Position numbers and translations under genes: made by a program. The notes beneath the pieces are model-generated. The model had not been told where the DNA came from and did no database searches. It saw only the letters and a list, made by a program, of their open reading frames with translations. A DNA stretch of 63,242 nucleotides, filler included, from Intoshia linei (taxonomy: Eukaryota > Animalia > Orthonectida): assembly GCA_001642005.1 (NCBI GenBank). It is 4 parts of 4 records of this genome, joined end to end, with 100 filler letters (N's around TTAATTAATTAA, not from the genome) between each part and the next. Parts side by side here need not be neighbours in the genome. Positions count along the whole stretch, not along the records: positions 26,610 to 51,722 come from LWCA01000514.1; 3 more parts are not named here. One strand, 5' to 3'. Numbering within the stretch: the first letter of the stretch is position 1; every line of letters starts with the position of its first letter. This document shows, one piece after another, positions 26,610 through 50,900 of this stretch.

Positions 26610-27427
26610 TATTTATAAAAATTTTTAGGATTGGACTGTTTTTACTTTATTTTTAATATTATATATTCATTCGTTCTTATAAATTTCAAAAAATGGAATC
26701 ACAAAATTGTTTGTAAAATTCTTTAGACAAATATTAACAAAATAAAATTAAGTGGAATAATTCAGTTTAAAGTAAAAAGGTAATGTGAAATGACGAGTCT
26801 ATGGAGAAACAAGTTTAGAAAACACTCCTTTAAAGGATTAATAAAAATAAATAGTAGCATTTTTAAGTAGGGTTTTATTATTATATTATTTTTTGAATGG
26901 AATTAAAAATATAATTTAAAATTATACAAGTTTAACTTAAAACTTAAATTTCAGATGGTCAGTGAAATGGTTAAATAAATAATTAAGTATCGTAAAAGCC
27001 TATGTCATAGTATTACAGTGTACAATAACAAAATGTTACTAGCAGAAGGTGATAAATAGCTATTTTCAATAATAATTGTCAATTGACCTATTTATCATAT
27101 ATCACTCCCCCGTAAAATTGTTTTAAAAATATAACTATAAAATATATAATCACAAGTGTTAAAAACGTTGGTGTATTTACTTTACAACGTAATGCATAAT
27201 CGTGTCAACATTGTTTGAATTTACAATGTTATATTTATATTCAATAAAATTTTATATGTAGATTGTACATTGTATTAACAGGAAACAAAATATCTAGTCT
27301 AAACTAAAAGAAACATTACATTGGACAGTGGAATTGAACCAAAATCGAAAATAAATAAACGACTAAATTCTCAAATATAATATCTTTGGATACATTTATT
27401 ATAAAATAATATTTGTTTAAATAAAAC

Positions 27428-28233
27428 ATGGATTGTGAAACAAATTTACAAAAAATTGAAGATTGTAAGGTTTTAAATGTCCAAGAAGATAAAAAGGTAT
27501 TTTTGAAAAATAACATATCACCCTGTTTAAATCTAGGAATTATCTGCATCAGTCATGTGGAAAGATGATAAACATGACTATCATTTAATATATTTTATGC
27601 GCCGTTTTGGTTGACTATATTGTAGAAATTATCTTAATCTAATAAACAATCAAAAAAATATTTTGACTAATAAAAATGTTCGTATAGTAGTCTGCTCACC
27701 ATCATTTATTTCATATCATAATTATAAAAAAAGTAACACCATTGAAACTGGTAACAAAAATGTAAATTATATTGTATAATTATTTAGATACCTATGTGAA
27801 CAAGTCTGGCGAAATTTACAATCTTCTAGATTTTATAATGTAATCTTTATACCAGTACAAACTTTTGTTTTTAAATTTGATTTATATCATAATTAGAATG
27901 AAAAAAACGGATTATTTGAGTTCTTTGATAGGAGTTTTGGCTCACCCCAGAGTACCATTTATTAATCATTATAATTATTGTTGTTGAAATTTTAAATATA
28001 TACTAATAGGACTTGATTAAAAATAAAGGATTTGATATGCAGGGAAATTTATTCAGAAATGGTGGACTTTTATTGATTGACAAAGGTTATACAAATGTAT
28101 ATGAATCTTTAATACAATTATCTTTATAGATCAAAATGTTCTCGTTCACTATATCCAAAAACACCCTAAAGAACATTATACAATTGAGCAAATTTTTGAA
28201 AAATTATATATTGACAAGACACAAATAAAATAA
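27428..28233 (+). CDS. PRXL2B: Selenoprotein U family / peroxiredoxin-like 2B (FAM213B, prostamide-PGF synthase homologue), 189 aa, UxxC with Sec codon TGA at 27612-27614
   Basis: Six GT-AG exons 27428-27496, 27537-27750, 27788-27839, 27897-27951, 28010-28085, 28130-28233 total 570 nt in one frame. Motifs: MWKDD..LIYFMRRFG-U-LYCR, TYVNKSGEIYNLLDF, FDMQGNLFRNGGLLLIDK, VLVHYIQKHPKEH. These match the FAM213B pattern RRFGCxxCR...GDLLQSGGLLVV...VLLHFVQKSPGD. SECIS downstream. Confidence 0.92.
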
Positions 28234-28251
28234 TGAGCAATTTTTATTAAC

Positions 28252-28309
28252 TTGAAAGAACATGATAAATGTAAGACAAAATTAATTTATACATTTTGAT
28301 GAATTTCAA
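28252..28309 (+). promoter_or_regulatory. Eukaryotic SECIS element
   Basis: Helix I TTGAAA (28252-57) / TTTCAA (28304-09); core ATGA-T (28262-66) / TGAT (28297-300); helix II AAATGTA.GA / TT.TACATTT; unpaired AAAA in the apical loop (28278-81); AATAAA at 28311. Confidence 0.9.
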
Positions 28310-28347
28310 TAATAAATATTTATTGTTATAACAATGTAGTTAATAAT

Positions 28348-31300
28348 TTATTTTTTTGGGGAGTTTTTAATGCATTCTTTTATTGCTTTCTTTGAGCCTT
28401 CGTTGTTTTGAAGATATGCAAAATATACAGCTCTCATGTTTCTACGAATGTTTTTGGAGTATTTGGTGAATTGATCTAAACCGGTTGAATAAAAGTATTC
28501 TTTTGTCTGTTCATATTGATGTTGAATGTTTTGACTTGCACCGTTGCTGTATTTATCTTTTATAACTTTTCTAATTGTAATTATTTTATTATACACTCAG
28601 TATTACAAAAACGAAAGATTAATTTAAAAACCTCAACATTGCAGTGTCGTCATGAGATAAATTTTTATTTTTTTTTACTGGAATTAACGGCATTTCCAAT
28701 ATTGGTATTTCTGGTTGTTTTACTCCATGTTTGATGTGTCTATATCTAAAAAATATAATTATTAAAATTAATCATGATTATTAATTATTTTTATATATTA
28801 GCAGTCAAATTTTCTTTGTTTATATTGTTCATATTAAATACGGAATTTAGTTTCCGCTACCGCAAACGGGTTACCGGTAGTGAAAAGTAGAAAAAGTACC
28901 GTCTCCAATAAATAATTTAATATTTTAAAATGCTTCATACACATATTTTTGTTACGATTTAACATAATTTGACCTGAATTTGATGATTTAAAATATATTT
29001 TAAAATAGACTGCTTAAAATATAAACAATTGACATACATAAGCTTTAAATGTTAGTCAGTAACTAATAGATAAAAGTAAATAAGAATTGAAATTATTCCT
29101 AATATTAAATAAATTTTTATCTATTAAAGTGAAATAACATCAAATTAATACACTAATATATAAAAAAATTTACATGTCCGCTTCGAATTTTCAATGTCTT
29201 TACATAACTCGAAGTTGGAAAGTGAAAATTCTGCACTAGACATGTAAATAACTATTATTAATATTGAAATGTTTCACCGTATAAACTAACCGGGACTTTA
29301 GTGTAGAAACTATTTTAGTTGATTTAACAAATTCAATGTTAATTTTTAAATTTGTTATTCTAATTTTGTTTTGAATCGGCACAGTATTTTTAATGCTCTC
29401 ATATAAGATATCAATATAATTCTAACTTATATAATATGCTACGCGATTTTTGTTTGTGGGAGTCTGTGTGTTGCGCTTTATTGAAATAACTACCAGTCTT
29501 AGAATTTTTTGAAGAACACATTTCAATTACAGTTTTTTGCGGTACGTATATTAAAATAAATTTCAACCTACCAATATAGCATTTTACGGGTCAAAAATCT
29601 TAGTTGTCCCCCTTTTTGAAAATCAAACGAGTTGGAAAATTTAAAAAAATATATACGCTGATGCGGATTTTAAAATCATAAACATTATCATAATTTTAAA
29701 TGCTGATGCGGATTTTAAAATCATAAACATTATCATAAATTTAAATTTAAAAAAATACACTGATGCGGATTTTAAAATCATAAACATTATCATAAATTTA
29801 AATTTAAAAAAATTATATTTTCAAAGTCAAAACCACAAACTACCCTTCATTTTTTAATGAAAACAGCCCTAGAATTTCAAAAAATTTACAGGTGGTACAG
29901 TTGTATCCTGTTAACACACACAGAAAATTTCAATCCGAATAAGTGACGACTTCATGGTCAAAAAAGCATTTTATTAGTCATATATTTTTNATGCTCTCAT
30001 ATAAGATATCAATATAATTCAATATAAACAAAAAATGTGAAATAATTAACGGTCAGAAAATTAAAAAAAAAGATTATTCTGATAGAACTTATTCCAGTTC
30101 ATATAAATACAAAATTTCAATCCCAGAAATCTAGCATTCCCGGTGAAAAATAATTTTTAATATATTATCAACCAATATTTTTTTTTAAATTTGTCCATTA
30201 AAATCAAAAATTGAAAATGTAAATATTGATTTTACAATTTCAAAAAAAATGTGTAATAAACGTCTACACATTTCCAATAAAGAAATATGGGTGAAAATCT
30301 ATATAATTCATTCCTTCGAAATTTTTATTTTCAAAACAACAACGAAACTAAAAGTAATACAACTTTGTTATTATCATTTTTATATTTATTACAATCCTTT
30401 GCAATATTTGTAAAATTCGACTGAAATGTTTATATTGTGAAGATTCGGTTAATTATTGATACATAATTGGTATTCTTAGGTATTTATTAAATTGTTACTG
30501 CATATGTATCATTACATTGAAAATGACAAAATAGGTTTTTATAATTTTATTTTTTCTGGAATTTATGCTATTTTGACAAATTTTTAGGATTGGACTGTTT
30601 TTACTTTATTTTAATATTATACACATTCTGTTTAATAAATTTAAAAAAATGGGATAACAATTGTTTTTAAAAAATAGAATTTGTAGAATTTCATATGTAA
30701 ACATTTATATTGTACGTAATATACTTGTTTGTTGTTTTAAAATTTAAAACATAAAATTTTTTAGAATGTGAAAAACACTAATAAATAATAGTATGTATGA
30801 TATAAATTACTTTGTATGTTTTTTAATAGAGGGTTTTTTGTATTTCACCATTTCACTATCATCGTGGTCTAATGAGTAGTCCTTCCATGGATCACAAATT
30901 TCGTAAGCTGTGTTTTTAACATAATAGTCATGATCTTTGACAACATTTTTCTGTAAATTTAATTAATACTTATTCATTATACATGACTGCGTGTGGGTTT
31001 AAAAGGTACAGTAATGGAAGATTGTAAATGTTACAGGCAAAATTTGAATATTTGAAAATTGCCTGGATTTGAATTTTACGGGCATGCAACAGGCAATTTT
31101 CAAATTATAAACGTTGTATTCAATTTCAATTGATGTAAAACATTAAGTGTTGATAAATATTTGGAATATTATGAAAGACTGATAAAATTACAAAATAATG
31201 TAAATGAACCCAGAATAAAAAATGATTGGAACATTTTGAACAAGTATTATTTCAATTTTGGTTACACTCATTAATATTAAATTAGGTACAAATTGATAGC

Positions 31301-32772
31301 TGAATTGATACATTAATTATTTAGGTCAAATTTGCAATGTTAAATTTTTTATATTATATGTTAATTTTAAATGTTATATATTTCATTTTTATTTAACTGT
31401 AGTTTATGTAAGTAATGGTAACTTTATTAAATTCTTAGCATAATTTGAACCGAAAAAATTTAAATTTAAAGAATAAGATAGTAAAATGTCTTATTGACAA
31501 GGAAGAGTGAAGTTTTTGAGATTAAAATTTATCTTACGTTTTTTGTCGAATAAAACTGACTTATAAAATTGGTTTTTGAAATTTATTCTATTAATTCCCT
31601 TCTTATCCTTACTTACATATAAAGTAAACTGGTTAAAAATGTATGTTTGTCTGTTTATTTGTTCCAGTTTATTTAAGAAGGTAAGGGGAGCCGAGTTTTA
31701 GAAATTCCATATTTCTATAACAGTTATTCCAGAGTGATGTTTTATCGCTAATTCCAATTTCAGAAATTGATTCCTTCAAGGTTAAAAACTCCAATTGTCT
31801 TTTTTTTTGAAATTCAAACACGTCATAGAATTATAAAAATTACACATTCTAATAAAAAGTTTTAAATTGATCAATATTATGATAATTTTCAATTTCAAAA
31901 TATTATATCTTCACGGCCAAAACCACAAATTACCCTTTTTTGTAAAAATTAAGAAGGTTCTAGAATTGTTGTTAAAAAATCTAGATGCTGTTTGTACGTA
32001 GTACATAACAGTCAACTAGTATGATATAAAGGTAATGGTAACATTTTTATGAAAGATTTTATTATTAAATTTATTATATTGTACAATTAAAAGTAAACTA
32101 TATGTACTGCTAGCTAATTTTTGTACAAATTAGACAACAGTCAAGCGAGTTTCGTTGATAATTAAAAAACTTATTAGCTTGTATATAAAAAACAATAAAA
32201 AGATTATCTTATGAACTAATTTATAAGAAACCTATTATATAGTATATGTATGGTTACATAAATTGAAAAGTTTAAGAGCATCATGGACCAGTTGCTAAAA
32301 GCAGCGGACCATATTTTGACAAATACGGTCCGCTTAATCTGTATGGTCTTTAGTAAGGACTCCTTACAGTATTAGCTATAATACGACAACTGAGAAAATA
32401 GCATAATCGATAGTTATTAATTATACATATATAAATTATTCGAATATATTTAAAAGGTAGAAAACGCTTTTCAACATTATAGATTCACCATTACTTTCGA
32501 TAGGGTTCTCCAATCGAATCGTTTCCAAACGACAATTTTTGTAAATAAAAATAATTACATTTGTATTCTCAATTAAATCTAACGGTATGGAAATATCTTT
32601 ATAAGCAGTTAATGGGTTATATAGATAAGGTTGAAAATCTTGTCTGAAAATATTTTAGAAATATATAATTTCCAAAAAACCTTGATTTTTTTTCATTTTC
32701 TTCCTTCAGAATTTTTTCCATATCTTTTTCATAACCTTTAATAACATTGTATAAACTGTCCAAATTAGACAT
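28348..32772 (-). CDS. Uncharacterised multi-exon protein
   Basis: Candidate exons 32772-32681 (MSNLDSLYNVIKGYEKDMEK..), ~32643-32559, 30950-30811, ~29359-29291, ~29235-29174, 28745-28632 and 28570-28348 (KVIKDKY...RRNMRAVYFAYLQNNEGSKKAIKECI). One internal junction is not phase-resolved. Confidence 0.55.
29420..30670 (+). mobile_element. Non-autonomous Helitron with internal ~45-58-bp triplication
   Basis: Family 5' end TCTAACTTATATAATATGCTACGCG; CTGATGCGGATTTTAAAATCATAAACATTATCATAA occurs three times (29658-29800). Confidence 0.75.
31606..32019 (+). mobile_element. Complete mini-Helitron, 414 bp
   Basis: A|TC...CTAG|T termini, no TSD; subterminal hairpin CTGTTTGTAC-GTA-GTACATAACAG 4 nt before CTAG. 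Confidence 0.85.
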
Positions 32773-32923: not shown

Positions 32924-35900
32924 TTAGATCGCGTCTTTTGCAATTTCAAAGTTTTTTTCAGCAAGTTTTAACATTTTTTCCAAACTGTTTTTTAATGTCT
33001 ATTTTTTAAATGTTTTATACATGTACTTTTGAAAATGTTTAAATTAGTTTTACCATAAAATTGTTTGATCCTTGCATGGTTTTTGATGATATTTCTTGGT
33101 GAATAATTACCAAATTTTTTATATATTTTTTTAAGGCATCTACTATGTTGTCACTGACAGTACTACATTTCTTTTTATTATTTTAATTTATATTTATATA
33201 CATCATTCCCAAGTATTGGCGGTATTTTGCATCTACTATTGCGAATGATGTTCCAATTCTTTGCTAAATTTTTTTCATTATTTAATTGTCATGTATAGAT
33301 TATTTTTAATTTTTGAACTTTTTTATTATGTATTAATTATGGGGAAATTTAAAACTTCAAGTTTGGGATACATTTTAATTTAGATTGAATTGAGTTTTAA
33401 TTAATTTAGTTACTTTTCAAATGAACTAATAGATTTAGAATGTTATGCAAAATTTTATAAACCATGATCCTATTCGACTATAATCAGTAAATGTTCAAAG
33501 TAATTAATACCAAATAAATATAACATACATATAAACAAGGCTATGAACTATATATGTTATATACAATGTATATTATACCTTAGTATGCATTATTTTGTAT
33601 TATAATTATAATACAATACATTCAATTAATAAATAAGTATTTATTAAGTGATATACATTAGACCAGTGGTTTTCAACCAGGGGGTCGCAACCGCTTAGGG
33701 GTCGTGAGAATTTGAAAATTTTATGAATATATCTACATTTTATTTATTTATTTATTTTTATTTTAATATAATATTGACAGTAATAATGTCACGGAAATAT
33801 TTTTACATTCTGTATTACAATTTTAAATGTTCTTCTTCACTCAGTATATAAACTATTTTAATAAATAAATAGTTACATAAATAAACTAAATAATAAAGTA
33901 ATAGATTTAATAAATGATTCCACTGCACGAATATTTTCTATGAAAAACCATGAGTACTTTTTGGTGTGATATGATTGATTTATATCCAAATTTATTTACG
34001 ATTACTTTGAGATTGCTACTATCTTTTTTGTCGACTTATCTGTGTGAAGCAAGATTTTATACGCTTGTTCATATAAAAACAAAGTCAATAAACTGATTAA
34101 ATGTTAAAAAGCATATGAGGCTCGCCTTATCGCATATACTGCCCAGGATATATATAATTGTAGCTAAAATCCAACCTCAAATTTCACACGATAAAAATAA
34201 ATGTAGTTATTATAATAATACATTTTACTGAGCAGTGCTCAGTGAGCACAGAATAAAATATAAATAAAACTGAATATGCTTTTTTAATAATTTTGTTTAT
34301 GTGAATTTATATGATGCTTGCAATATATAGAACATTTTTGGGTGGCGAAACTAAAAAGGTTGAAAACCACTGCATTAGACGTTTTATAAATAAATGTTTA
34401 ATTGTCATTTTTTGGTATAAATCAACACTTACGCCAGTGTCTACCGGTGGGGTTAATTTAAAATTTTATCTGGGTTTCGATAGTCCTCGAATAAATATAT
34501 TTAAAAAAAACTAGAATACATCGGCATATATCAATGAACCAGCCTTAAACCACAAGAAATAATCAAAAAAAAGTGTACACAGTAGCGTGTACATTATGTG
34601 GAGAGGGCCAAGCCCTCATTACTGTCCTATCATTCTAAAATAATAGGTTGCATTAGAAAAAAAATTAGTAAGGTGGGACTAATTTTTTGCTGCATGGGTA
34701 CGGTTATTATATATATACAGTCATAGAGTAAAATAATAATAAATATAGCGGCGGTATTGATAGATCTAACTGTATATATAACGGGCAATTTTTTCAATGT
34801 TCTGTGGTGCAATGAAACGGCAAAAATGATCCAAGGAGATATAAAAATATATTTCAGGTTAAAAATTGAATTAAAATTACATTTATATCATAACCGATAG
34901 TATTTGCTCTGCACATTTGGAAAAATACGCCATATTGTATAACAGAAAGATTTGAATGAAATAGTTGGTTCGATGCTATAACGGATCTACAATTTGGTCT
35001 TGGGTCAATCTAAATAATATATAATGCACACTATTATTATTATTATGTGTATATAATATATACTATATATGCACAATATTGTATGATATGTATAATAATA
35101 ACATAATGCAATATATTATATTCAGTTTTACTCATATAAAGAAGTATACGAGACGTGCCCAAATGTGTTCCCGCGTAAAAATAGTCGTTATAAGGGATTC
35201 ATTAGAAAGGTAATAATCATTAAAGAAATAGTATTTACTTAGAGTTGGAAGGATCACCATTTAAAATGAAATGTTATAAACTAAACGCATAATAAATAAA
35301 GATTAGCATTCAATAAATAATCTCACTAAAATGAAAAATAGATTTTACTCAAGTTTAAAGTTTTTGAAACACCTAAAAGTTGATTTTGCAGATTAGGTGT
35401 GCATACACCAGGTTAAGAACCAATGATATAGATCGGAAATTTGCAACGTGTGACTCGAAAGTCATTTTTAAAATTTTATATGGGATAGTACAGTAGAATC
35501 CGCTTAGTGATCAAAAATTCGATTAAATTCAATACTCATTTTTTTGATATTGTAGGATATATATAATCCTTACTTATTATATAATATATATATATAATAT
35601 TACTTAATATATAATATGCTACGCAATATTTGTTTGTGTGTGTTCCACTTTATTGAAATAACTACCAGTCTTAGAATTCTATAAAGTCCACATTTCAATT
35701 AATTTTTTCCGGGACATATAATAAGATAAATTTTAACCTTCCAAACTCACATCTTACGGGTCAAAAACCCTAATTGTCCTTTTTTTGAAAATTAAACGAG
35801 TTGGAGAATTTAAAAAAAATACAGGTGGTACAGTGATATCCTGTTAGCACACACAAAAATTTTCAATTTGAATAAGTGACACCTTCACGGTCAAAAAAGC

Positions 35901-38900
35901 ATTTTATTAGTCATATATTTTTTTCCGAAATATTTTATTAAAACAAAAAATGTGAAATAATTAACAGGTCCGAAAATTAAAAAAAAAAATTATTCTGATA
36001 GAACTTATTCCAGTTGATATAAATTTCCGAAAATTAAAAAAAATAAAATATTCTGATAGAGCTTATTTCAGTTGATATAAATACAAAATTTTAACCCCAG
36101 AAATCTACGCATTCCCGGTGAAAAATAATTTTTAATATATTATCAACCAATATTTTTAAAATATTTCGATTAAAATAAAAATTGAAAATATAAATATTGA
36201 TCCTACAATTTCAAAAATAATATGCATTGAACGTTAAGATTACAGATTCATTGTCTATATCAATGTTTCTTAACCTTTTTTACTTTAGTGTTTTTACTTC
36301 AACTGTCAAATAAATAAAAATTGGAGCGCACCTTAAATTTTGATCAGAAAAAAACGCATCGATATTCGAAAATGTGCAAATATTAAAAACGATAAAATAA
36401 AATCATAACTACAAAAATACTTTTATATGGTAAACTTAAATATAAAAAAAAATTTAATGTATGATGGAATGTTGATATTTTTGGTGTTAACCATATTATT
36501 TAAATAATACATTATATTAAATAGTAAACCCCAAAATATTCATCCAAGAATGGTCAATGTAAAAGTTTGATGCTAATTTTTAAAAATTTATATAATACAC
36601 TCATATTTCTTTGAGCGCACTTGAAATCTACTCATGTAGTACCAGTGCGGTGGCGGACCGGTTGAGAATAACTGATCTATATTATAGACTCTAGACATGG
36701 GTGCACAACCTTTCCACCAATTCAGCCACAATGCTACTTTTCTCACAGATACTACGGCCTCACAAAATTTCGATGATTGTAGGCTAATCTACAATTTTCA
36801 ACATATTTCATTAAATCATCCAATTAATATAATCTTACAAAAAAAAAATTTAGAAAAAACCAAAATTTTACCAACCTTTAAGGAAGAAATCCCTTTTTAC
36901 CAATATTTTTTTTAAAAATCCATTTTTATCAAAGTTTTAGAATAAATACTACCCTATCTGATTCCAAAAAAAAAAACCAAAATTTTACCAACCCTTAAAG
37001 AAAAAAATCGCTTTTACCAATATTTTTATGAAAAATCCCATTTTAATAAATTTTTAGATCAATAATTATTTTGACTGATTCCATAAAAAAAACCTGATTT
37101 TAAAAAAATTTGAAAAATCTTTTTTTACTATTATTTTTTTGAAAAAACATTAATTATTAATTTTTTGGTAAATAATTAATAATAATTGGACAACAGAAAA
37201 AAATTATATTAAAAACCGATTTGTTGATACATTAGAGTGGAAGACATAATAAAAATATGTAAATATTAATAATGACATAAAAAATATATCAATGACTACC
37301 TTGATTTTGTGTATTTTTCGCTAACATTTGAGAAATTGAACAAAGTCAAGAATGTAACCTTTTGATTAAAATATGTTAAATAGACCTTAAATAAAATCTC
37401 ATTTTAACTTTTCAATTTGAAGTAAAATGATATATTGCATTATAATCAGATGTATTGGCCACAGCCGCACGTTGTGCACCCTGGCTCTAGACTCTAGACG
37501 GTATTAAAAAGTATGACCTCGTCAGAACTCATAAGAACTAGCTGCGGTTTATACAAAGTCAATAATAGTCAAGCTAGTTTATTAATAAATTGCTTTTTTG
37601 AGCGTGAAGGCATAATTTCGTGAGATTGAAATTTTATTTAATATTAATATTTTGATAAATATTACACAATTTCTGCTTTGATACAACTTTGATTTCTTCT
37701 GAGACTTTGGTTGGACTATATTAATTTTTTCCTTTTCAATTTGGTAAGAATGATTAATTTCATTATATTCTGCCCGGGTAAAATAGTTGGATATTTTTAG
37801 TATTGACAATAATTTATCATATCGTATACTGAAATCCAAAACCCAAGTTATTTCTTGATTCTACAATAAATATATTCACATAATGTCTATATCAAATGGT
37901 TCCCAAATTATGTGAAAATCTACCCCTGGAACCCTGTTGATTATAAAATACATTAACCAACACTGAAATAAAATTAAATTTAAAATTTTTCCAACTTTGT
38001 ATAAATTAATCCTTACATCTTTAGTGTCATAAAAAGTGACGAAATCAATGTTGACATAGCCAATAACATTATGATCTATACATTTTTGTACAATAAGATA
38101 AGTGTATTTGTTGAGTTTTTCGGGATTAATCGAAGTTTGTGGTATAGAATAAGTTTCAGCAACCATGGATTGATGGCTCGAATGAATTTGATCCGCTGTA
38201 ACTAATATTTTTGTAGACAAATCTGGAGAAATTTCCACTACAACCGTGCAACAAATGTAACTTTCCGAAGGAACAATAGCCTCAATGATACCGCCTATTA
38301 AAATTTATATAAAACAAATGATAATTTTTGAACCATGTTCCAAAAATTTAGAAATAAAGTGTTTCGCCGATTTGTACACTGGTTTAATTTGTTGACCGTT
38401 CTTGGAAATAAAATAAACTAATTCGGTAACTAATTTTGTAAAAGATGCTTCCTAAATCGCATTTAAATATAAATACAAAAATTAAAACCTGAGCCCATTT
38501 ATTATTCCATCTCTCCTGATATCGATTGTATTCTTTTAAAACAAAAAGATAACTTTCCATCTTGGTTACATTAACCAATAAAATACCATCTGAATTGAAA
38601 CTATTGTTTATCTTTAAAGCCCATTTTTCTACGTGTAAATTTTCAATCATCAATTGGGCTAATGATTCGTAAAGCTACATTGATTGTAAAAACATGTATT
38701 ATGACATAAAATTAATCACGGTATAACCTGATCAATATTTAGAATATCAATATCGTTTGGTGGCAAATCTAATTTAAGTTCGATAAATATTTTTTTCGTA
38801 TTTGTTTTATTATGCAGAAACTGATGTACATATGGATCACACCCAAAAATTGAAATTTTAAGTTCATTGGCAATAATAATGTCATCAAAAGATGTATAGC

Positions 38901-41900
38901 TATTCACTATGTATGCTTTTTTGTTTAGGATAAGAGTTTTTAATTGTCGCATTGATTGACTACTATATTTCAATAATGTGGATAGACTTAAATTGTGATT
39001 CTAATATTATTATTTAATTTATTTTAAAAGTTTATAATTTACTGGAAAAGAATTAATGTAATCTGGTACAATTATTTTGAATCGAGATAAAGCGCCATTT
39101 TCAGTTTTAAAGTTTAATTGATCAAGTTCAAAATCTTTAGGAATGTTTTCAAAGTTTTCTGTGGTGTTGTGTCGGTAATAGTTATCCAATAATATAAATT
39201 TTTTATAATATTCTTCAACTTCTGCATTCAATGATACTGGTGATATATAAATTACTTCGACATTTGGATCTAAATTAGTACATGTAAATTACATCATTAT
39301 GTAAATCATGTAATCAAGATATTATTATTGAATTTATTTTTTTTGTAGAATTAAAAACTCCACTCTCTCCAGAGTTAGTTACTGTTTGTACCAAATACAT
39401 AACAATCAAGCTAGTAATATAATAATATTACCCATTATATCGCATATTCTACCAATTTGAAAATTTTGAATAATGCCAATTGATTTGATATTATTACGAA
39501 TTTCCGAAGAAAATCCAAGCGAAGGCAAATGTATGATTACTCTTTTATTAGAATTGATTTCTTTCCAATTTTTTTGAAATACCTAAAAAATAAATAGGTT
39601 TCAATAAACCATATCATTTGTGTGTCAGAAGCTGTGATCCAGTTATAATGATTTAAAAAGCGTCTGTAGTCAAATCCAAATTATGTTTATCCTTTTCAAT
39701 TCTTACTAATATAAAACGCTTTGTTTGTCTGTGTGGTATTATCGTTTATTTCAATAACTACGAGTCTTAAAATTATAATTTTGTAAAGTCCACATTTCAA
39801 TTATAGTTTTTTCCGGGGGTTTTAGCAAAATAAATTTCAACCTCCCAAACTCACATCTTACGGGTCAAAAAGCCCAATTGTCCTTTTTTTTGAAAATCAA
39901 ACGAGTTCGAGAATTTAAAAAAATATATACTCTGATACCGGATTTTAAAATCATAAATATTATCATAAATTTAAATTTAAAAAAAATAATATCTTCAGGG
40001 CCAAAATCCCAAATTACCCTTTTTTTATGAACACAGCCCTAGAATTTAAAACAATTTACAGGTAATACAGTTATATTCTGTTAACACACTCAAAAAATTG
40101 GAATCTGAATAAGTGACGCCTTCACGGTCAAAAAAGCACTTTAGTATTCATATTTTTTTATTTCAAAACTATTTTATTAAAACAAAAAATGTGAAATAAT
40201 TAACTGTCCGAAAATTAAAAAAAAGATTATTATGATAGAACTTATTTCAGTTGATATAAATACAAAATTTCAACCCCACAAATCAACGCATTGCTGGTGA
40301 AAAGTAATTTTTAATATATTATCAACCAATATTTTTCAAATGTTTCGATTTAAATCAAAAATTGAAAATGTAAATATTGATCCTACCATTTCAAAAAAAA
40401 TGTGCATTGAACGTCTACACATTTCCAATACAGAAATATGCTTGAAAATCTATATAATACATTCCTTCTGATTTTTTTTCATTGCTACGCAATTTTTCAT
40501 TCTCAAATTACTTATTTGTATTTGCTTAATTATTAAATGCCTCCCTTAATTATTAATACATAATTTGTATTTTAAATTATTTATTAAATTGGTAATGAAT
40601 CATGTTAAAATTAGATAACTCCGCCCTCGGCAGAGCTAGGTACAGTATTATTATAAAATATTTTATGATAAAATGGTTTAATCAGTTTTTGACCATAATG
40701 CGTTGATTTCTAGGTTGAAATTTTGTATCTATATGAACTGGAATAAGCTGTATGAGAATAATCTATTTTTTAAATAATTATCATTAATAATTTCAAATTT
40801 TTTAATTTAAAATAGTTATTAAATAAAAAAATAAATACTAAAGTGCTTTTTTGACTGTGAAGACGTTACTTTTTGATATTAATTTTTTTTTAATTCTAGG
40901 ACTTTTCCTTTTCTAAAAAAGGGAATTTATGGTTTTGATTGTGAAAATAAACCGTTTTGAGATTGTGATTTATGATATAATACTTATTATTTAAAAATTT
41001 TTATTAAATTCTAAAACTTTTTTCATTTTTAAATAAAAGGGTAATTTGGAGTTTTAACTCTGAAGATATACATTTTTGAAATCATAAATTATAATAATGC
41101 TCATAATTTTAAAATCTGTATCAAATTGTTTATTTTTTTTAAATTGTAAAACACGTTTGATTTTTAAAAAAAAAAAATAATTGGTGTTTTTGACCGAGAA
41201 GTTGTAAGTTTCTGAGATTGAAATTTATTTTTATTTCTGCCCTAGAGAAATTTGATTGGAGATTTTTGTTTGTTAAAATTCTAGGACTCTTAGTTGTTGA
41301 AAAAAACGGAACACAGACAGACAGACATTCAATCCTAACTTATAGAAAATTGAATGTTTGAATGTGTTGTAGTTTCTAGCATATATATCAAGGGTTCCCA
41401 AAGTTGACGATATCGCCACCAGGGGGCGATTAATTCAGTTAGGGAGCGATGTTAAAAAATTATAAAAACATAAATAGAAAATTTTTCTAACATATTTATT
41501 TTACTGAATCAGTATAGTAAAGATGATGCGGTATCAAATTTAAAATATAGTTTCTTTTCAATATTCATTAATTGTTTTATTATAACATTTTAATTATTAA
41601 TTACACTGTGTATTCGAAAAACGATTTTAAATGGATAGAGTGGAGCGTCGATAAATTTTTTTGGTTATAAGAGGATATTTTTATAGAGAGTTTTGGATCC
41701 ACTGATATAAACAGTAACGGTAATAAATATATTATTTTTTAAATAACATATAATATAATTTTCAATTTTTTAATTATTACATATTGACTTCGAATATAAT
41801 GTGAATTGAATCCAAAAAAATTGGTTATTTCGAGTCGATTTCGTAGTCAAAAAATTTTTTAGTGGGGCGTTGAGAAAATATATTGCTAAAAAGGAGGGGT

Positions 41901-44900
41901 AGATAACATGAGTTTTGAAACCCCTCATATATATTATACACAAATTTATATTGTAAATCATTTTTTTGGTTAAAATTTGAAATTCGCATTAAATTCATTT
42001 TTCACTGCGTTAATCGAGGTAGACCCGTAATTTTGTTATCATACTTTCAGTTAATCACATACAATTGAATTTTTGTGTTACATTTTACTAAAAAACTAAT
42101 TCCTAAAAATTTAAAAAAGATAACAAATCCAATGTAAAAAAATCTAAATTTCAATTAAAAAGATTTAAGCTATAAATTCTACCCAATCAGTAAATATCAC
42201 AACTACAACTTTTTTAATACTTGTCCTATGTAAATGTGCATAATATCAATAAATATATAAATATTTTTAATATAAATTAGGTTTATGGATTAATAATTTA
42301 TAATTCTTATAAGAAAGGTTTAATTTTTCATTTAGCATAAAAGCTGTCGCGATTTGTAATTTAATTTAATAAAAATTTAAAATTACTTTAAATCTACTAG
42401 TGTAATGTTCATACTGAGTCCTTTGTCGTGCTTTCAATTTTTTTTTCATTACCCGATATCTTAAATTAAGTATCCATGAAATGGCTATTACACCAGATGT
42501 CCATTTATGCTTTCTGTATTCTAAATACTGTTTACGATCTTTGTACATCTAAAAAGTATTTAAATGCATAAATTTTAATGTACTGTACTACACTCAATAG
42601 TAGTGGTTCCCATTTGATACTTTTCATCAAAAAAAAGTTAGCGATCCACAAGTTAATTTAAAATTAATTTAGTTGTAATGACAAATAGCATAAACAATGT
42701 GATTCAGTTTAGATTTTAGATTCAGTGTATGATTAATATACCTTAGGACAGGGTTTCCCATACATTTTTCACCGCATCCAGTAATTTACTATGAAATTTC
42801 TTTTATATTTTTTTTAAAGAAATTCGGAGACGTTTGCCATTTATATTTTATTTATTAATTAACTTTTAATCAAATCTTTATTTATATTGTCATTTTTAAT
42901 TAATTACTTAAATTTTTCCAAACCTGGACTTAATTTTTAAAATTTTGAAACATTCCTACTAATTGTACATGTAATTGAAATGTGGACTTTAAAAAATTTT
43001 AAGAATGATAGTTATTGTAATAAACAGTAACACATACACACAAACAAATACTGAGTAGTAATATATAATATATAATATATATGATATATAAGTAAGGATA
43101 TTAAGAAACTCTGTGAGAATCATCAGGCTGTGATATCATTAATAAAAAAAAAATTACCGTTAGGTCATTTTTTGAATTGGGCCTAGAATAAAAAATGTTG
43201 GGAAACACTGATGTACATTGTACAATTTACAGTAATATCTTTATCTACGATAACACACACACACACAGAAAAACAAAGCATTACTTATCCTATCCTAACT
43301 TATATAATATACTACGCGATTTTTGTTTGTGTGCGTGTGTCTGTGTGTTACGCTTAATTTACATAACTACCCGTCTTAGAATTTCATAAAGACCACATTT
43401 CAATTATAGTTTTTTCCGGGACGTATAATAAGATAAATTTCAACCTGCCAATTTCACATCTTACGGGTCAAAAACCCCAGTTGTCCCTCTTTTTGAAAAT
43501 CAAACGAGTTGGAGAATTTAAAAAGATATATAAGCTGATGCGGGTTTTAAAATCATAAACATTATCATAAATTTAAATTTAAAAAAATTATATCTTCAGA
43601 GCCAAAACCTTCTTTTTTTAATGAAAACAGCCCTAGAATTGAAAAAAATTTACAAGTGGTACAGTTGCATCCTGTTAACACACATTTGTAAAGATATTTC
43701 AAAAAAATGTATGTCAAAAATTTTTTGCGTAACAACACTTTGTTGTTAAAGAAAGTAGAATCAAGTTATAATTGACTGATTATGTACAACAGTATCAGAT
43801 GGCTCAGTAGAGGTAAAGTTCTTGAGCGCTTTGTGGAATGCTTATCAGAAATTAAAACATTTTTAAGATATAAAGATAACTCTTACTCTTAATTAGATAA
43901 TAACGATTGGATTGTTATTCTTATGTTTTTTACTGACTTTTCCTTGCATTTAAATGAACTTAAACTTAAATTACAAGGGTACGGAAATACTATTGATGTA
44001 ATGTTTAGTATTATTAAGAAATTTGACTGTAAACTATCAATATTCTTTCGTGATATAGGAAATAAAGATTACAAATATTTCCTTAAATTAAAAAAATTCA
44101 TGATAGAATCAAATGAAATACTATTAAGTACAAAGAAGGAGCGAATCTCATTTTCTTAGATAGCATTGATTCATTTAAAAATCAATTTTCTAAAAGATTT
44201 AACCAGTTTAGAGAATTTGAAAAAGCCATAATGTTCATAAAATATCCTGATGAAGTAGAATACAAAAATTTAGAAATTCAGTTGGTAGAATTTCAGACAA
44301 GTTCCATTTGGAAGTACAAAATTTATTAAAGTGAGATCAGAAATTGAAATAATAGAACGAAATAGACTTACAAAATCATTTAAAGATGTTACCTACTTTG
44401 ACCAATCAAATATGTTATTAGAAGTTTGGAATTCTATGCCTGAAACATTTAATAGTCTGAAATGTCTAGCTAAAGCTATATTAACTATATTTTCATCTAC
44501 ATATTCTTGTGAATCGTTATTTTCCACATTTAATTTAAAATATCATAAAAGGAATAGACTTCACAAGGAAACTTGATGAAACTAGTTTGGCTTTTGTAGT
44601 GTTAAAATAAATAAGTTATGAACCTCCCATTGAAAAACTTGCAGCTCAATTTTTTTAATCTAAATAAATATAAAAATTATTTTTTTAACTCATTTTCCAT
44701 CAACAAGTTGTTCGACTTAATTGACGGTTTTAATTGACATAATATTTTTTTAATAAAAACTCACTAGAAAAAAATTTCTGAAAATAGTATTAAATTTAAC
44801 ACACCTAGTTTTAGTGGACTGCCATCCCTGTAATATACTGTTAAAATACACTAAAAATGTCACATTTAAAGAAATTAATTTTAAAATTAATATAAAACAT

Positions 44901-47900: not shown

Positions 47901-50900
47901 TAATTTTTCCATCTACATTTTTGGGTTCATATAAGCGATATTAACATTATAAGCCTTGTATAATTTTTCATATTGTTTAAACAAAGTAATTATACTAAAA
48001 AAAATTAAAATAAAATTATACCGACTTACCTCCCCCAAACGCCGGTAGAATTTTTTTGAAATTGTTTATATGTATCATCCTTTTTAAAATTTCCATGTTC
48101 GTAAATTAGACAATTGTTACGATTTAATAATTCAGAAACACTTGCCGGTGTTGTTGGAGGAGGCTAAACATTTATTATTTATCTTATCTGTAAATTTTTA
48201 AAGCTAAATTTTATAAAAATAATTAAGCAAGTAATTCTAATAAAAAAGCAAAAAAAAGCAAAACAAAAATTACATATTACCGTACTATTGTTAGAACTAC
48301 TATATTCATAATTCTAAAAAGTTTTTAAAATACTTTATGACAGTGTTCGCCACATAAGTGTCGCGACTTGCGAGGTACATAAAAATATTTACCGATTCCA
48401 TCCAATGGTATATTAAATCCGCATTTTTCAAGAATTACAAAATACTTTTTAATGAGACATTTTAAGGGAGGCGCGAAAAAAATTTCACACCACTGCTTTA
48501 AGGTTTAAATCAGTGCTTTTCAAAGGAATAAACGTTGTGGACCCCTAAAATAGTTATATGTTATTATCGTTTTCATCTTATTATTTACTTGTTATTATTA
48601 CTTTAATTATTAAATTTAATTAATATAAATATTAATCATATTTTTAATTGAGGAATTATAATACTATTTTTTCTTTTAATTTTTAAAATATTTTTTGCAT
48701 TCAATACTTACAATTATGCTTCAGGTACAACACAAAATATTGACAATTCAAAACCGTTATGTATCGAAACATAGCCTTATGTATTTTAAAAAAAAATAAA
48801 CTATTCATTGATATTGCGAAATTCATTAAAAAAAATCAAATATATATAAAATATCCGTTAAATAAGAATTATTTTAGGTCCTAGTTAGAGAACATGGCAT
48901 AAAATTACGATTAAAATAAATTTTCTAGTGATTTTTTGAGAGTTTACTGTAATATCAGAAAATGTTAATGTAATATTACAAAGTGGATTTTTCTTTTATG
49001 GGTGGGTCAATTTGGATTTAGTGGTGTTTTCTCCTTAATAATATTAGATTAATTCTTAAAATAATACATATAGTTTAGCGGTGAACCCCTGTTATATAGC
49101 GTAGACACTTAGGTCCACATGGATCCTTTGAGAAGCACTGGTTTAAATACAGATTTAAAAATTGAAAAAATTCAATTTTTTTATTTTTTAATCATTTTTT
49201 ATAAAAATTATTAATTATGAAATTACTAGTGGAATTATTGATGTTGAAGCTTTTTTAAGGTATATAATCGGTTGTCTGTATTTACACTTTTTATTATTTT
49301 TAATATCCACTAAAGTATCTTTTTCTTTTATGGATTCTAAAAAATTAATAAAAATACCAACTGTAAATAAATATTTGTAGCAGGGTTTCTCAATCGCGAT
49401 ACTAGAGTTACAATGGTATTGTGGAAATTTAGGGTCATGGTTTGTGATAGTGAATGCATTTTCACGTTAAATTTCAAATATTTTTAACTCGACAACCGAT
49501 TTTTTTTAAATTGACTAAAATGTAAATAAGGCCTTTTATTTGATTTTGTAAAAAAATTAATATGGTCTTTTTGTATAGATTTTTTTACCGATTTAAAAAT
49601 GTCAGGTTCATTTTATCATATTTTTGTAGGTAAATAAAATTAAAGTCAAAATTTGGAAAAGTCTACAAATGCCTGGGTGGATACTATCCATTTCGAAATC
49701 ATCAAATATTTCGGAAAAAAAATATATCAATACTAAAATGCTTTTTTGACCGTGAAGTCGTCACTTATTCGGATTGAAATTTTTAAATTCTAGGGCTGTT
49801 TTCATTAAAAAAAGGGTAATTTAGGGTTTTTGACCCGTAAGATGTAAGTTTGGGCTGTTGAAATTTATTTTGCGAACACCCTGGTAAAAATTTTAATTGA
49901 AAAGTGAACTTTATAAATTCAGTAATATATAAATTTCATATAAATTAAATGTATAAATTCATATAAGGAGAGCCATCAGCAGCTCGAGCTAGATGGAAAT
50001 TATAAACCCATATAAAAATTTTTTAAAAAATGGGACCTCTATACATTTGCATTAGGTAAAAAAAGTAGATCAGATATATGGTAAAAGGGACAAATAATTC
50101 TGTAAAATATACAAAAGTATTACAGGACGATTTATTCAATTTCAAAGATTCTTTTAATGTGTTTCAACAAAACAATGCATTATTACACGTATTCACATAC
50201 ACAAAAGAGTGGTTATCAAATAAAGGAATACATTTATTAAAATCGCCTGCTTGTAGCCCTGACCTCAATCCAATCGAAAATTTATGTTGCGAAAATAAAT
50301 AACCAAAATTATGTAGGGTTTTTAAGGGAAGTTTTTTTTACCCAATTTTTAAAAATTTTGAAGATAATTTTAGTCCCAAGATTTTGTAGGGTTTTTAAAA
50401 AAACTTTTTTTTCTACCATTTGTTAAAGATTTTGAAAATGTTTTTCGGACTAAAATTATGTAAGGTTTATAAATAAATGTCACTGTCACTCAGTTTTTAA
50501 ATGTTTTGAAAATAATGTTGTGATAAAAATTTGGAAGGGTTTTAAGGGAATTTTTTGCTCACCTATCTATTAAAAACTTGAAGATTCCATAAAATTTTAT
50601 AAAATATTTACTTCAAAACACTACAAAATTTTGGTCATTGTCATTAAAGAAACCACAACAATGTTGTCAAAAAATAAATATTCTGATTAATTAACAAAAT
50701 CGATGATTATGTCGCTCAACTGAATGTTCGCCACTTGATTTTAGCAGTGTATTTATAAATTAAAAATAACTATTGAAAATCGCATTGTTATTGAAATTTT
50801 GGTATAATGAAGAAATTTTCCAACATAACCTATTAATACATTTAAAAAGTAAGCCCATCATGATTGTAGGCTCGGCCTCAAGGCCCCTAGCCTCTCCACG

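What the first reader, a model, noticed from the sequence alone, without database searches (positions are those of the whole stretch)
27428..28309. Hidden selenoprotein: PRXL2B/SelU gene with in-frame UGA (RRFG-U-LY-C) and a canonical SECIS
Seen: six small exons, none in the ORF track, splice into a 189-aa thioredoxin-like protein. The only internal stop is TGA at 27612-27614, exactly at the first Cys of the RRFG-CxxC-R redox motif. A stem-loop 19 nt after the TAA has all the eukaryotic SECIS hallmarks: helix I, AUGA/GA quartet, ~10-bp helix II and apical AA. Known: mammalian PRXL2B/FAM213B is a Cys enzyme, and SelU-family members carry Sec only in some lineages. Inference: this gene is recoded to selenocysteine, the organism keeps Sec machinery despite a compact genome, and automated annotation would truncate or mis-splice the gene.
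Basis: partly seen in the sequence, partly recalled or inferred. Interest (0 to 1): 0.9.

Follow-up and report, generated by a model that had tools for sequence, protein, structure and literature searches.

The report
Mis-annotated selenoprotein gene in Intoshia
A small six-exon gene of the parasite Intoshia linei encodes a PRXL2B/SelU-type redox enzyme whose catalytic cysteine is replaced by a UGA-encoded selenocysteine with a matching signal hairpin; the public annotation hides this by cutting the UGA out, but the kind of gene is already known in other invertebrates.

Summary
The piece is contig LWCA01000514.1 of the orthonectid Intoshia linei. Spliced contigs in three 2024 runs confirm all five short GT..AG introns of a 570-nt CDS (189 codons plus TAA). 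They keep exon 2 uninterrupted, with TGA 27612-27614 unchanged. The TGA sits in RRFG-[TGA]-LY-C-R. By alignment register it falls on Cys44, the catalytic Cys of human prostamide/PGF synthase (PRXL2B; PDB 9US9/9USA, E=3e-6 for the downstream part). Eighteen nt after the TAA lies a hairpin with helix I, an AUGA/GA quartet, a 7+2 bp helix II and an apical AAAA. It is the only match to my own SECIS descriptor in 50 kb (both strands); chance expects 0.02-0.58. Rfam's SECIS models do not match it. Not shown: the Sec machinery (no genome-wide access here), the strand and end of the 3'UTR, and selenium incorporation. Sec-containing SelU3/PRXL2B is already described in non-deuterostome invertebrates, so this is a new member of a known kind. 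I found no paper on selenoproteins in orthonectids. Confidence that it is a true selenoprotein gene: about 0.87. Interest is moderate to low.

The parts
27428..27496 (+). Exon 1, with the start ATG at 27428. An in-frame TAA lies two codons upstream.
   Evidence: The joint 27496/27537 is seen in spliced contigs of X2, X5 and X6.
27537..27750 (+). Exon 2. It encodes RRFG-[TGA]-LY-C-R and the following strand VRIVVCSPS.
   Evidence: It is contiguous in the contigs of three runs with 0 differences. Translation.
27612..27614 (+). In-frame TGA, the proposed Sec codon. By register it corresponds to catalytic Cys44 of human PRXL2B.
   Evidence: It lies 23 codons upstream of the R that aligns to chain residue 67, and Cys44/Arg40/Arg41 are described in PMC12938796. 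It is unchanged in RNA contigs.
27610..27687 (+). False intron of the GenBank model OAF68100.1 (78 nt, 26 codons, GT..AG by chance). It removes the TGA and the CxxC motif.
   Evidence: P0002 reads RRF|VVCSPS. tblastn maps 45 residues onto 71 codons. GT and AG ends. No such joint appears in any run.
27788..27839 (+). Exon 3
   Evidence: Joints 27750/27788 and 27839/27897.
27897..27951 (+). Exon 4
   Evidence: Joints.
28010..28085 (+). Exon 5 (the GNLFRNGGLLLIDK region, conserved with PRXL2B)
   Evidence: Joints. Alignment to 9USA.
28130..28233 (+). Exon 6, coding part, ending in TAA 28231-28233. A tandem TGA follows at 28234-28236.
   Evidence: The QKHPKEHY stretch aligns to QKSPGDY of PRXL2B, including Pro167.
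28243..28316 (+). Whole SECIS-like hairpin, including a lower stem extension 28243-49/28310-16.
   Evidence: The RNAfold MFE has this architecture. z=-1.7 against shuffles.
28252..28257 (+). SECIS helix I, 5' strand. It pairs with 28304-28309 (6 bp).
28262..28265 (+). SECIS core AUGA. Its partner GA is at 28298-28299, and the U.U flanks are 28263/28300 and 28266/28297.
   Evidence: The quartet geometry is inferred from the SECIS consensus.
28267..28296 (+). Helix II (28267-73/28290-96, then A.A, then 28275-76/28287-88) and an apical loop with AAAA at 28278-28281, 12 nt after the core.
28311..28316 (+). AATAAA hexamer just after the hairpin, a possible poly(A) signal of the + gene (inferred).
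   Evidence: Such hexamers are common in this 76% A+T DNA.

Best explanation
This is a functional selenoprotein gene of Intoshia linei. It is a PRXL2B/SelU3-type thioredoxin-fold reductase in which the attacking residue of the CxxC centre is selenocysteine (U-L-Y-C). The mRNA keeps the UGA. A form-1 SECIS hairpin in a very short 3'UTR, about 450 nt downstream of the UGA in the mRNA, would recruit SBP2/eEFSec/Sec-tRNA so that the ribosome inserts Sec and reads on for 127 more codons. Shown here: the exon structure, UGA retention in RNA, homology of the part downstream of the UGA, the register of the UGA with the catalytic Cys, and the presence and rarity of the hairpin. Inferred: that the hairpin is on this mRNA, that the Sec machinery exists, that Sec is inserted, and the enzymatic activity.
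For: (1) Searches identify the piece as Intoshia linei contig LWCA01000514.1. (2) In one search, spliced contigs from three runs of a 2024 study show all five GT..AG introns, exon 2 uninterrupted, and no base difference at 27612-27614. The 2016 DNA run agrees. (3) Searches show that TGA is the only internal stop. The 127 codons after it stay open across five correctly phased introns in DNA where about 9% of random codons are stops (my estimate). (4) In one search, the part downstream of the TGA matches human prostamide/PGF synthase (9USA/9US9) at E=3e-6 out to the C-terminus. (5) In some searches, the ungapped register puts the TGA on Cys44, with RR matching the strictly conserved Arg40/Arg41 and the second Cys matching Cys47. 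(6) Searches show a hairpin with all SECIS hallmarks 18 nt after the stop, unique in 50 kb, where chance expects 0.02-0.58. (7) In one search, the X2 contig covers 28234-28348 without a break, while the deep contig of the convergent minus-strand gene in X5 stops at 28319. The cover of 28234-28318 is therefore best assigned to the + gene's 3'UTR (inference). (8) (PMC3473315): Sec-form SelU3 is the usual state in non-deuterostome invertebrates, and their SECIS elements are of the AUGA_AA type.
Against: Rfam's SECIS covariance models give no match, even at E<=10 on a 90-nt search. The fold energy is only modestly better than shuffles (z=-1.7). My SECIS descriptor was tuned after I had seen the site. 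The runs are kept as contigs, so neither strand, nor 3' end, nor rare isoforms can be read; in X5 the gene's contig stops at 28233, and a second AATAAA lies at 28224-28229. No tRNA-Sec or machinery gene is in the piece, and the rest of the genome could not be searched. Pfam AhpC-TSA_2 reaches only 17.8 bits against a cut-off of 27, though on the mis-spliced model.
Confidence: 0.87

Rival explanations
1. Decaying gene. The Sec machinery has been lost in this reduced parasite, the UGA now terminates translation after 61 residues, and the hairpin is a relic.
For: Orthonectid genomes are strongly reduced. The machinery was not tested. Rfam does not recognise the hairpin.
Against: 127 codons downstream stay open and conserved with PRXL2B to the last helix. 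All five introns are still spliced correctly, and the mRNA is present in three samples. The hairpin keeps every SECIS hallmark. This lineage evolves fast, so a dead gene should have decayed.
Confidence: 0.05
2. The UGA is read through or recoded without selenium, for example by a near-cognate Cys or Trp tRNA or by a lineage-specific reading of UGA.
For: Nothing direct. The ORF evidence shows only that ribosomes must pass the UGA, not what they insert.
Against: The site is exactly the Sec/Cys position of the family, and a SECIS-like hairpin lies where it is needed. The three genes checked on this contig end in TAA, and the public annotation of this contig uses the standard code. No sign of a code change was seen, though only this contig was examined.
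Confidence: 0.04
3. The GenBank model is right. A 78-nt intron (27610-27687) removes the UGA, and the real product is the 163-aa protein.
For: The segment has GT..AG ends and a length divisible by three. Contigs drop rare isoforms.
Against: No run shows that joint, and three runs show the segment retained. Removing it deletes the CxxC centre and its helix, 26 residues that keep the human register exactly. At 78 nt it is longer than all five real introns (37-58 nt).
Confidence: 0.03
4. Sequencing or assembly error created the TGA.
For: None.
Against: The same TGA appears in one DNA run of 2016 and in three runs of an independent 2024 study.
Confidence: 0.01

Closest known systems
Sec-containing SelU3 (prostamide/PGF synthase-like, PRXL2B) of non-deuterostome invertebrates (Jiang et al. 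2012, PMC3473315)
   Same: The family and the recoded site appear to be the same, both have an AUGA_AA-type SECIS in the 3'UTR, and both occur in a protostome or earlier-branching lineage, where Sec is reported as the usual state.
   Different: The host is an orthonectid, a group not covered by that survey or by any paper I could find. The sequence is very divergent: word-based searches found no relatives. Assignment to SelU3 rather than SelU1 or SelU2 rests on the RRFG motif and the PDB and Atlas matches, not on a tree.
Human prostamide/prostaglandin F synthase PRXL2B (PDB 9US9, 9USA; PMC12938796)
   Same: Both have the thioredoxin-like fold family, the Arg-Arg-x-x-C44-x-x-C47 centre, identical spacing to the next strand, the conserved GG...V.H..QK.P C-terminal part, and a similar length (189 vs 198 aa).
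   Different: The human enzyme has Cys at position 44, while this gene has UGA. Identity is low. Prostaglandin chemistry in an orthonectid is unproven, and a general peroxide or disulfide reductase role is just as possible.
Vertebrate SelU1 (fish, birds; Cys in placental mammals; PMC3316567)
   Same: It belongs to the same PRXL2/SelU superfamily and shows the same evolutionary interchange of Sec and Cys.
   Different: It is a different paralogue, PRXL2A. From my own knowledge its centre reads RRPG-U/C-xxC rather than RRFG; this was not tested here.

Membership tests
Eukaryotic selenoprotein gene (UGA-Sec plus SECIS) | In-frame UGA at a position that is Cys or Sec in homologues | tested here: met
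   The TGA at 27612 lies 23 codons before the R that aligns to residue 67 of 9USA, which places it on Cys44. RR corresponds to Arg40/41. The N-terminal part itself could not be aligned by a tool, so the register rests on ungapped spacing and the motif.
Eukaryotic selenoprotein gene (UGA-Sec plus SECIS) | UGA retained in the mature mRNA | tested here: met
   Spliced contigs of X2, X5 and X6 cover 27535-27749 with 0 differences and no joint there.
Eukaryotic selenoprotein gene (UGA-Sec plus SECIS) | Reading frame conserved downstream of the UGA | tested here: met
   127 open codons follow. They match PRXL2B at E=3e-6 to the C-terminus.
Eukaryotic selenoprotein gene (UGA-Sec plus SECIS) | SECIS structure: helix I, internal loop, AUGA/GA quartet, helix II of about 9-11 positions, unpaired AA in the apical loop | tested here: met
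   Searches give the pairs. It is the only hit of my own descriptor in 50 kb, where 0.02-0.58 are expected. SECISearch3 was not available.
Eukaryotic selenoprotein gene (UGA-Sec plus SECIS) | Match to the curated SECIS covariance models (Rfam) | tested here: not met
   There was no SECIS hit at the gathering score or at E<=10, even on 90 nt. From my own knowledge, the Rfam seeds are mostly vertebrate and insect sequences, and this element is 80% A+U.
Eukaryotic selenoprotein gene (UGA-Sec plus SECIS) | SECIS lies within this gene's own 3'UTR | tested here: inconclusive
   The X2 contig runs through 28234-28570 but merges with the convergent gene. X5's deep contig of that gene ends at 28319, which favours the + gene as the source. 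Contigs carry no strand or end information.
Eukaryotic selenoprotein gene (UGA-Sec plus SECIS) | Genome encodes tRNA-Sec, EEFSEC, SECISBP2, PSTK, SEPSECS and SEPHS | not testable with these tools
   Only this 25-kb contig was available, and it holds no tRNA.
Eukaryotic selenoprotein gene (UGA-Sec plus SECIS) | Selenium actually incorporated | not testable with these tools
   This needs 75Se labelling or mass spectrometry.
PRXL2 / SelU family (Pfam AhpC-TSA_2, PF13911) | Match to the family profile | tested here: inconclusive
   PF13911 scores E=0.0044 and 17.8 bits, below the cut-off of 27, on the mis-spliced 163-aa model. Single exons are too short to score.
PRXL2 / SelU family (Pfam AhpC-TSA_2, PF13911) | Significant similarity to a characterised member | tested here: met
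   9USA/9US9 prostamide/PGF synthase match at E=3.3e-6 over residues 67-182. The nearest clusters by features all carry PF13911, and the nearest structural cluster is PGF synthase at TM 0.73.
PRXL2 / SelU family (Pfam AhpC-TSA_2, PF13911) | RRxG-CxxC redox centre | tested here: met
   The gene reads R-R-F-G-[TGA]-L-Y-C-R, against Arg40, Arg41 and Cys44-x-x-Cys47 in the human enzyme.
SelU3/PRXL2B subfamily (versus SelU1, SelU2) | Groups with PRXL2B in a phylogeny | not tested
   No homologue sequences could be retrieved. The first Atlas hit by features was a PRXL2C cluster, and the first by structure was PGF synthase.

The most novel reading that the evidence does not exclude
Intoshia linei, one of the most reduced bilaterians, keeps the whole selenocysteine pathway for a very small selenoproteome of which this PRXL2B/SelU3 gene is a member. 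The other members would likewise be hidden or mis-spliced in the public gene set. That would make orthonectids a natural minimal-selenoproteome animal, comparable to the single-selenoprotein nematodes.
Probability: 0.25. Interest if true: 0.5.

Novelty: new member of a known kind. Interest (0 to 1): 0.35.

Why it matters
It corrects a public protein record: OAF68100.1 lacks its active site because the gene predictor spliced around the UGA. It is the first evidence I could find that orthonectids use selenocysteine. That bears on how far extreme parasitic genome reduction erodes the Sec pathway. It also warns that other selenoprotein genes in this gene set, which is used in spiralian phylogenomics, are probably mis-modelled in the same way. 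It does not reveal a new mechanism.

Tried and rejected
- Rfam searches for SECIS on the whole piece and on 401-nt and 90-nt sub-regions gave no SECIS hit, only chance snoZ40 and MIR7991 matches.
- Pfam on single exons gave nothing relevant because they are too short.
- PDB searches with the two halves of exon 2 gave nothing relevant.
- The ESM Atlas gave no usable hit with the 45-aa piece.
- The phmmer search of 1.84 billion representatives with the 45-aa piece found only the organism's own mis-spliced model, plus a 3843-aa protein with no aligned stretch, which I took for compositional bias.
- The search for homologous proteins with the GenBank model, whole and with region 95-160, returned only itself.
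- The metagenome scan found no relatives.
- Ciliate or other variant genetic codes were considered at first because of the 24% GC and the TAA-TGA tandem stop. I rejected them once the organism was known. The gene's eight Gln codons are all CAA or CAG.
The GenBank model returned by a tool served as the near-full-length proxy.

Full report
**What the sequence is**

The usable piece (26610-51722) has 21-29% GC. It has almost no long ORFs under the standard code, as expected for an A+T-rich eukaryote with short exons. A phmmer search with the part of exon 2 after the TGA returned a 163-aa protein, P0002. An exact look-up names it OAF68100.1, "hypothetical protein A3Q56_04120 [Intoshia linei]". It lies on a 25,113-bp contig, LWCA01000514.1 of GCA_001642005.1, which is this piece. 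Intoshia linei is an orthonectid, a highly simplified parasitic spiralian. Its genes have short introns, with a published median of 57 bp (PMC6543705). That fits the 37-58 nt introns seen here.

**The gene model, tested against RNA**

I laid one 2016 DNA run and three 2024 runs of another study on 27000-29000. The three 2024 runs are not labelled as RNA. Their contigs, however, skip five segments with GT..AG ends, so they derive from spliced RNA.

- The joints give these exons: 27428-27496, 27537-27750, 27788-27839, 27897-27951, 28010-28085 and 28130 onward.
- The coding total is 570 nt, which is 189 codons plus TAA at 28231-28233. A second stop, TGA, follows directly.
- Exon 2 is continuous in all three runs, with no base difference. 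The TGA at 27612-27614 is therefore present in the mature mRNA, is not TGT or TGC, and is not spliced out.
- The DNA run agrees, so a sequencing error is excluded.

**The public annotation is wrong at exactly this point**

P0002 reads ...RRF|VVCSPS.... tblastn places its residues 24-68 on 27537-27749 with 26 codons missing. The predictor invented a 78-nt GT..AG intron, 27610-27687, which removes the TGA and the whole CxxC centre. No run shows that joint.

**What the protein is**

Single exons were too short to score in Pfam or the PDB. The GenBank model, being a sequence returned by a tool, served as a proxy.

- It matches human prostamide/prostaglandin F synthase (PRXL2B; PDB 9USA, 9US9) at E=3.3e-6 from residue 67 to 182.
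- It matches Pfam AhpC-TSA_2 weakly: 17.8 bits, below the cut-off of 27.
- In the ESM Atlas its nearest clusters all carry AhpC-TSA_2. The nearest by structure is "Prostamide/prostaglandin F synthase", with TM 0.73.

The structure paper for 9US9/9USA gives Cys44-Val-Val-Cys47 as the redox centre. Cys44 attacks the endoperoxide, and Arg40 and Arg41 are strictly conserved (PMC12938796). In the window, the arginine that aligns with residue 67 is encoded 23 codons after the TGA. An ungapped register therefore puts the TGA on Cys44, the two arginines of RRFG on Arg40/41, and the Cys of LYC on Cys47. The proline that the paper calls Pro167 is also kept (QKHP against QKSP).

**The hairpin**

The hairpin begins eighteen nt after the TAA. 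Its parts are:

| Element | Coordinates |
|---|---|
| Lower stem extension | 28243-49 / 28310-16 |
| Helix I (6 bp) | 28252-57 / 28304-09 |
| Asymmetric internal loop | between helix I and the core |
| AUGA core | 28262-65 |
| Opposing GA | 28298-99 (U.U on both sides) |
| Helix II (7 bp) | 28267-73 / 28290-96 |
| A.A mismatch, then two more pairs | 28275-76 / 28287-88 |
| Apical AAAA | 28278-81, 12 nt after the core |

The unconstrained RNAfold minimum already has this architecture, although its energy is only modestly better than shuffles (z=-1.7).

I wrote a SECIS descriptor requiring the core, the helix II pairs, the AA distance and helix I. I ran it on both strands of the piece and on second-order Markov simulations. 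This site is the only hit at every ATGA setting, including the strictest. The expectation is 0.02-0.58 per 50 kb. A chance hit on the correct strand within 150 nt of the stop therefore has a probability of about 2e-3 or less.

Two cautions apply. The thresholds were chosen after I had seen the site. And Rfam's SECIS covariance models do not match it at all. From my own knowledge those models miss many non-vertebrate elements, but it remains a negative result. The invertebrate survey reports that nearly all invertebrate SECIS elements are of the AUGA_AA type (PMC3473315), as this one is. In the mRNA the core lies 451 nt after the UGA.

**Is the hairpin on this mRNA?**

This is only partly answered. 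In run X2 one contig runs from exon 1 through 28234-28570 and into the convergent minus-strand gene, whose intron 28571-28631 has CT..AC ends. The two transcripts have been merged by the assembler.

In run X5 the minus-strand gene is very deep, at 780, and its contig stops sharply at 28319. I take this to mean that the minus-strand mRNA does not reach the hairpin. The cover of 28234-28318 in X2 would then come from the + gene.

An AATAAA at 28311-28316 would fit a + strand end near 28330-28345. But another AATAAA lies at 28224-28229, and the X5 contig of this gene stops at 28233. Contigs cannot show strand or ends, so the point needs raw stranded reads or 3' RACE.

**Mechanism and rivals**

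The best explanation is ordinary eukaryotic Sec recoding. The UGA at the catalytic position is decoded as Sec under the direction of the 3'UTR SECIS, giving a U-x-x-C reductase. The ranked rivals are as follows.

- **Decaying gene with a relic SECIS (0.05).** This is unlikely. 127 codons after the UGA stay open across five correctly phased introns, although about 9% of random codons here are stops (my estimate from base composition). They remain recognisably PRXL2B to the end, and the mRNA is present in three samples.
- **Read-through without selenium (0.04).** This cannot be excluded without chemistry, but nothing supports it.
- **The annotated splice is the real one (0.03).** The RNA contradicts it.
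- **Sequencing error (0.01).** Independent runs contradict it.

The main gap is the Sec machinery. The piece holds no tRNA, and the rest of the genome was out of reach. Its presence is inferred only from the state of this gene.

**Comparison with what is known**

SelU has three animal subfamilies. SelU3 is the prostamide/PGF synthase (PRXL2B) group. Sec forms of SelU3 were found in non-deuterostome invertebrates, and all Cys forms lay in deuterostomes (PMC3473315). Vertebrate Sec forms belong to SelU1 (PMC3316567). A Sec-form SelU3 in a spiralian is thus the expected ancestral state.

No paper in the searchable library mentions Intoshia or orthonectids together with selenoprotein, selenocysteine or selenoproteome. 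The finding is therefore a new member of a known kind, in a lineage of interest because of its extreme reduction. The subfamily assignment rests on the RRFG motif and on the PDB and Atlas matches, not on a tree, because no homologue sequences could be retrieved.

**Verdict**

I put about 0.87 on a true selenoprotein gene. Novelty is modest and interest is about 0.35. The practical value lies in correcting OAF68100.1 and in prompting a proper selenoproteome scan of orthonectid genomes.

Noticed in passing
window 27306-27307: All three 2024 RNA-derived contigs read GG where the genome and the 2016 DNA run read AA, in the 5'UTR of the gene. This is either a strain dinucleotide polymorphism or A-to-I editing. 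The contigs cannot tell which.
   Followed up: no
window 28348-32772 (-): A convergent neighbour gene is annotated as a 248-aa protein with no Pfam family. It stops with TAA at 28348-28350, and its last intron, 28571-28631, is confirmed by RNA contigs. It is far more abundant than the SelU gene (depth up to 780). The 3' ends of the two genes lie within about 30 nt of each other or overlap.
   Followed up: partly
window 32924-39231 (-): An IQCH-like ATP-grasp gene (PF24923) lies on the minus strand. Three ORF pieces at 37876-38973 match it, with E down to 1e-16. This fits an animal with flagellated or ciliated cells.
   Followed up: partly
window 50078-50302 (+) and 44331-44576 (+): There are relics of transposases: a Tc1/mariner-type DDE_3 fragment (E=2e-5) and a hAT C-terminal dimerisation fragment (E=3e-6). 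Both are short ORFs in otherwise non-coding A+T-rich DNA.
   Followed up: no
run X5 (organism B), laid on window 27000-29000: A run labelled as a different organism in the same 2024 study holds the same spliced transcripts with identical sequence. I suspect it is a host sample carrying the parasite. The labels are coded, so this could not be checked.
   Followed up: no
protein P0001 (not in the window): A 3843-aa protein scored E=5e-9 against the 45-aa exon piece but had no aligned stretch reported. I took this for compositional (N/K-rich) bias and did not inspect it.
   Followed up: no
window 28231-28236: The gene ends in a tandem stop, TAA then TGA. This is unremarkable in itself, but together with the low GC it made a ciliate-type code look possible until the organism was identified.
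   Followed up: yes
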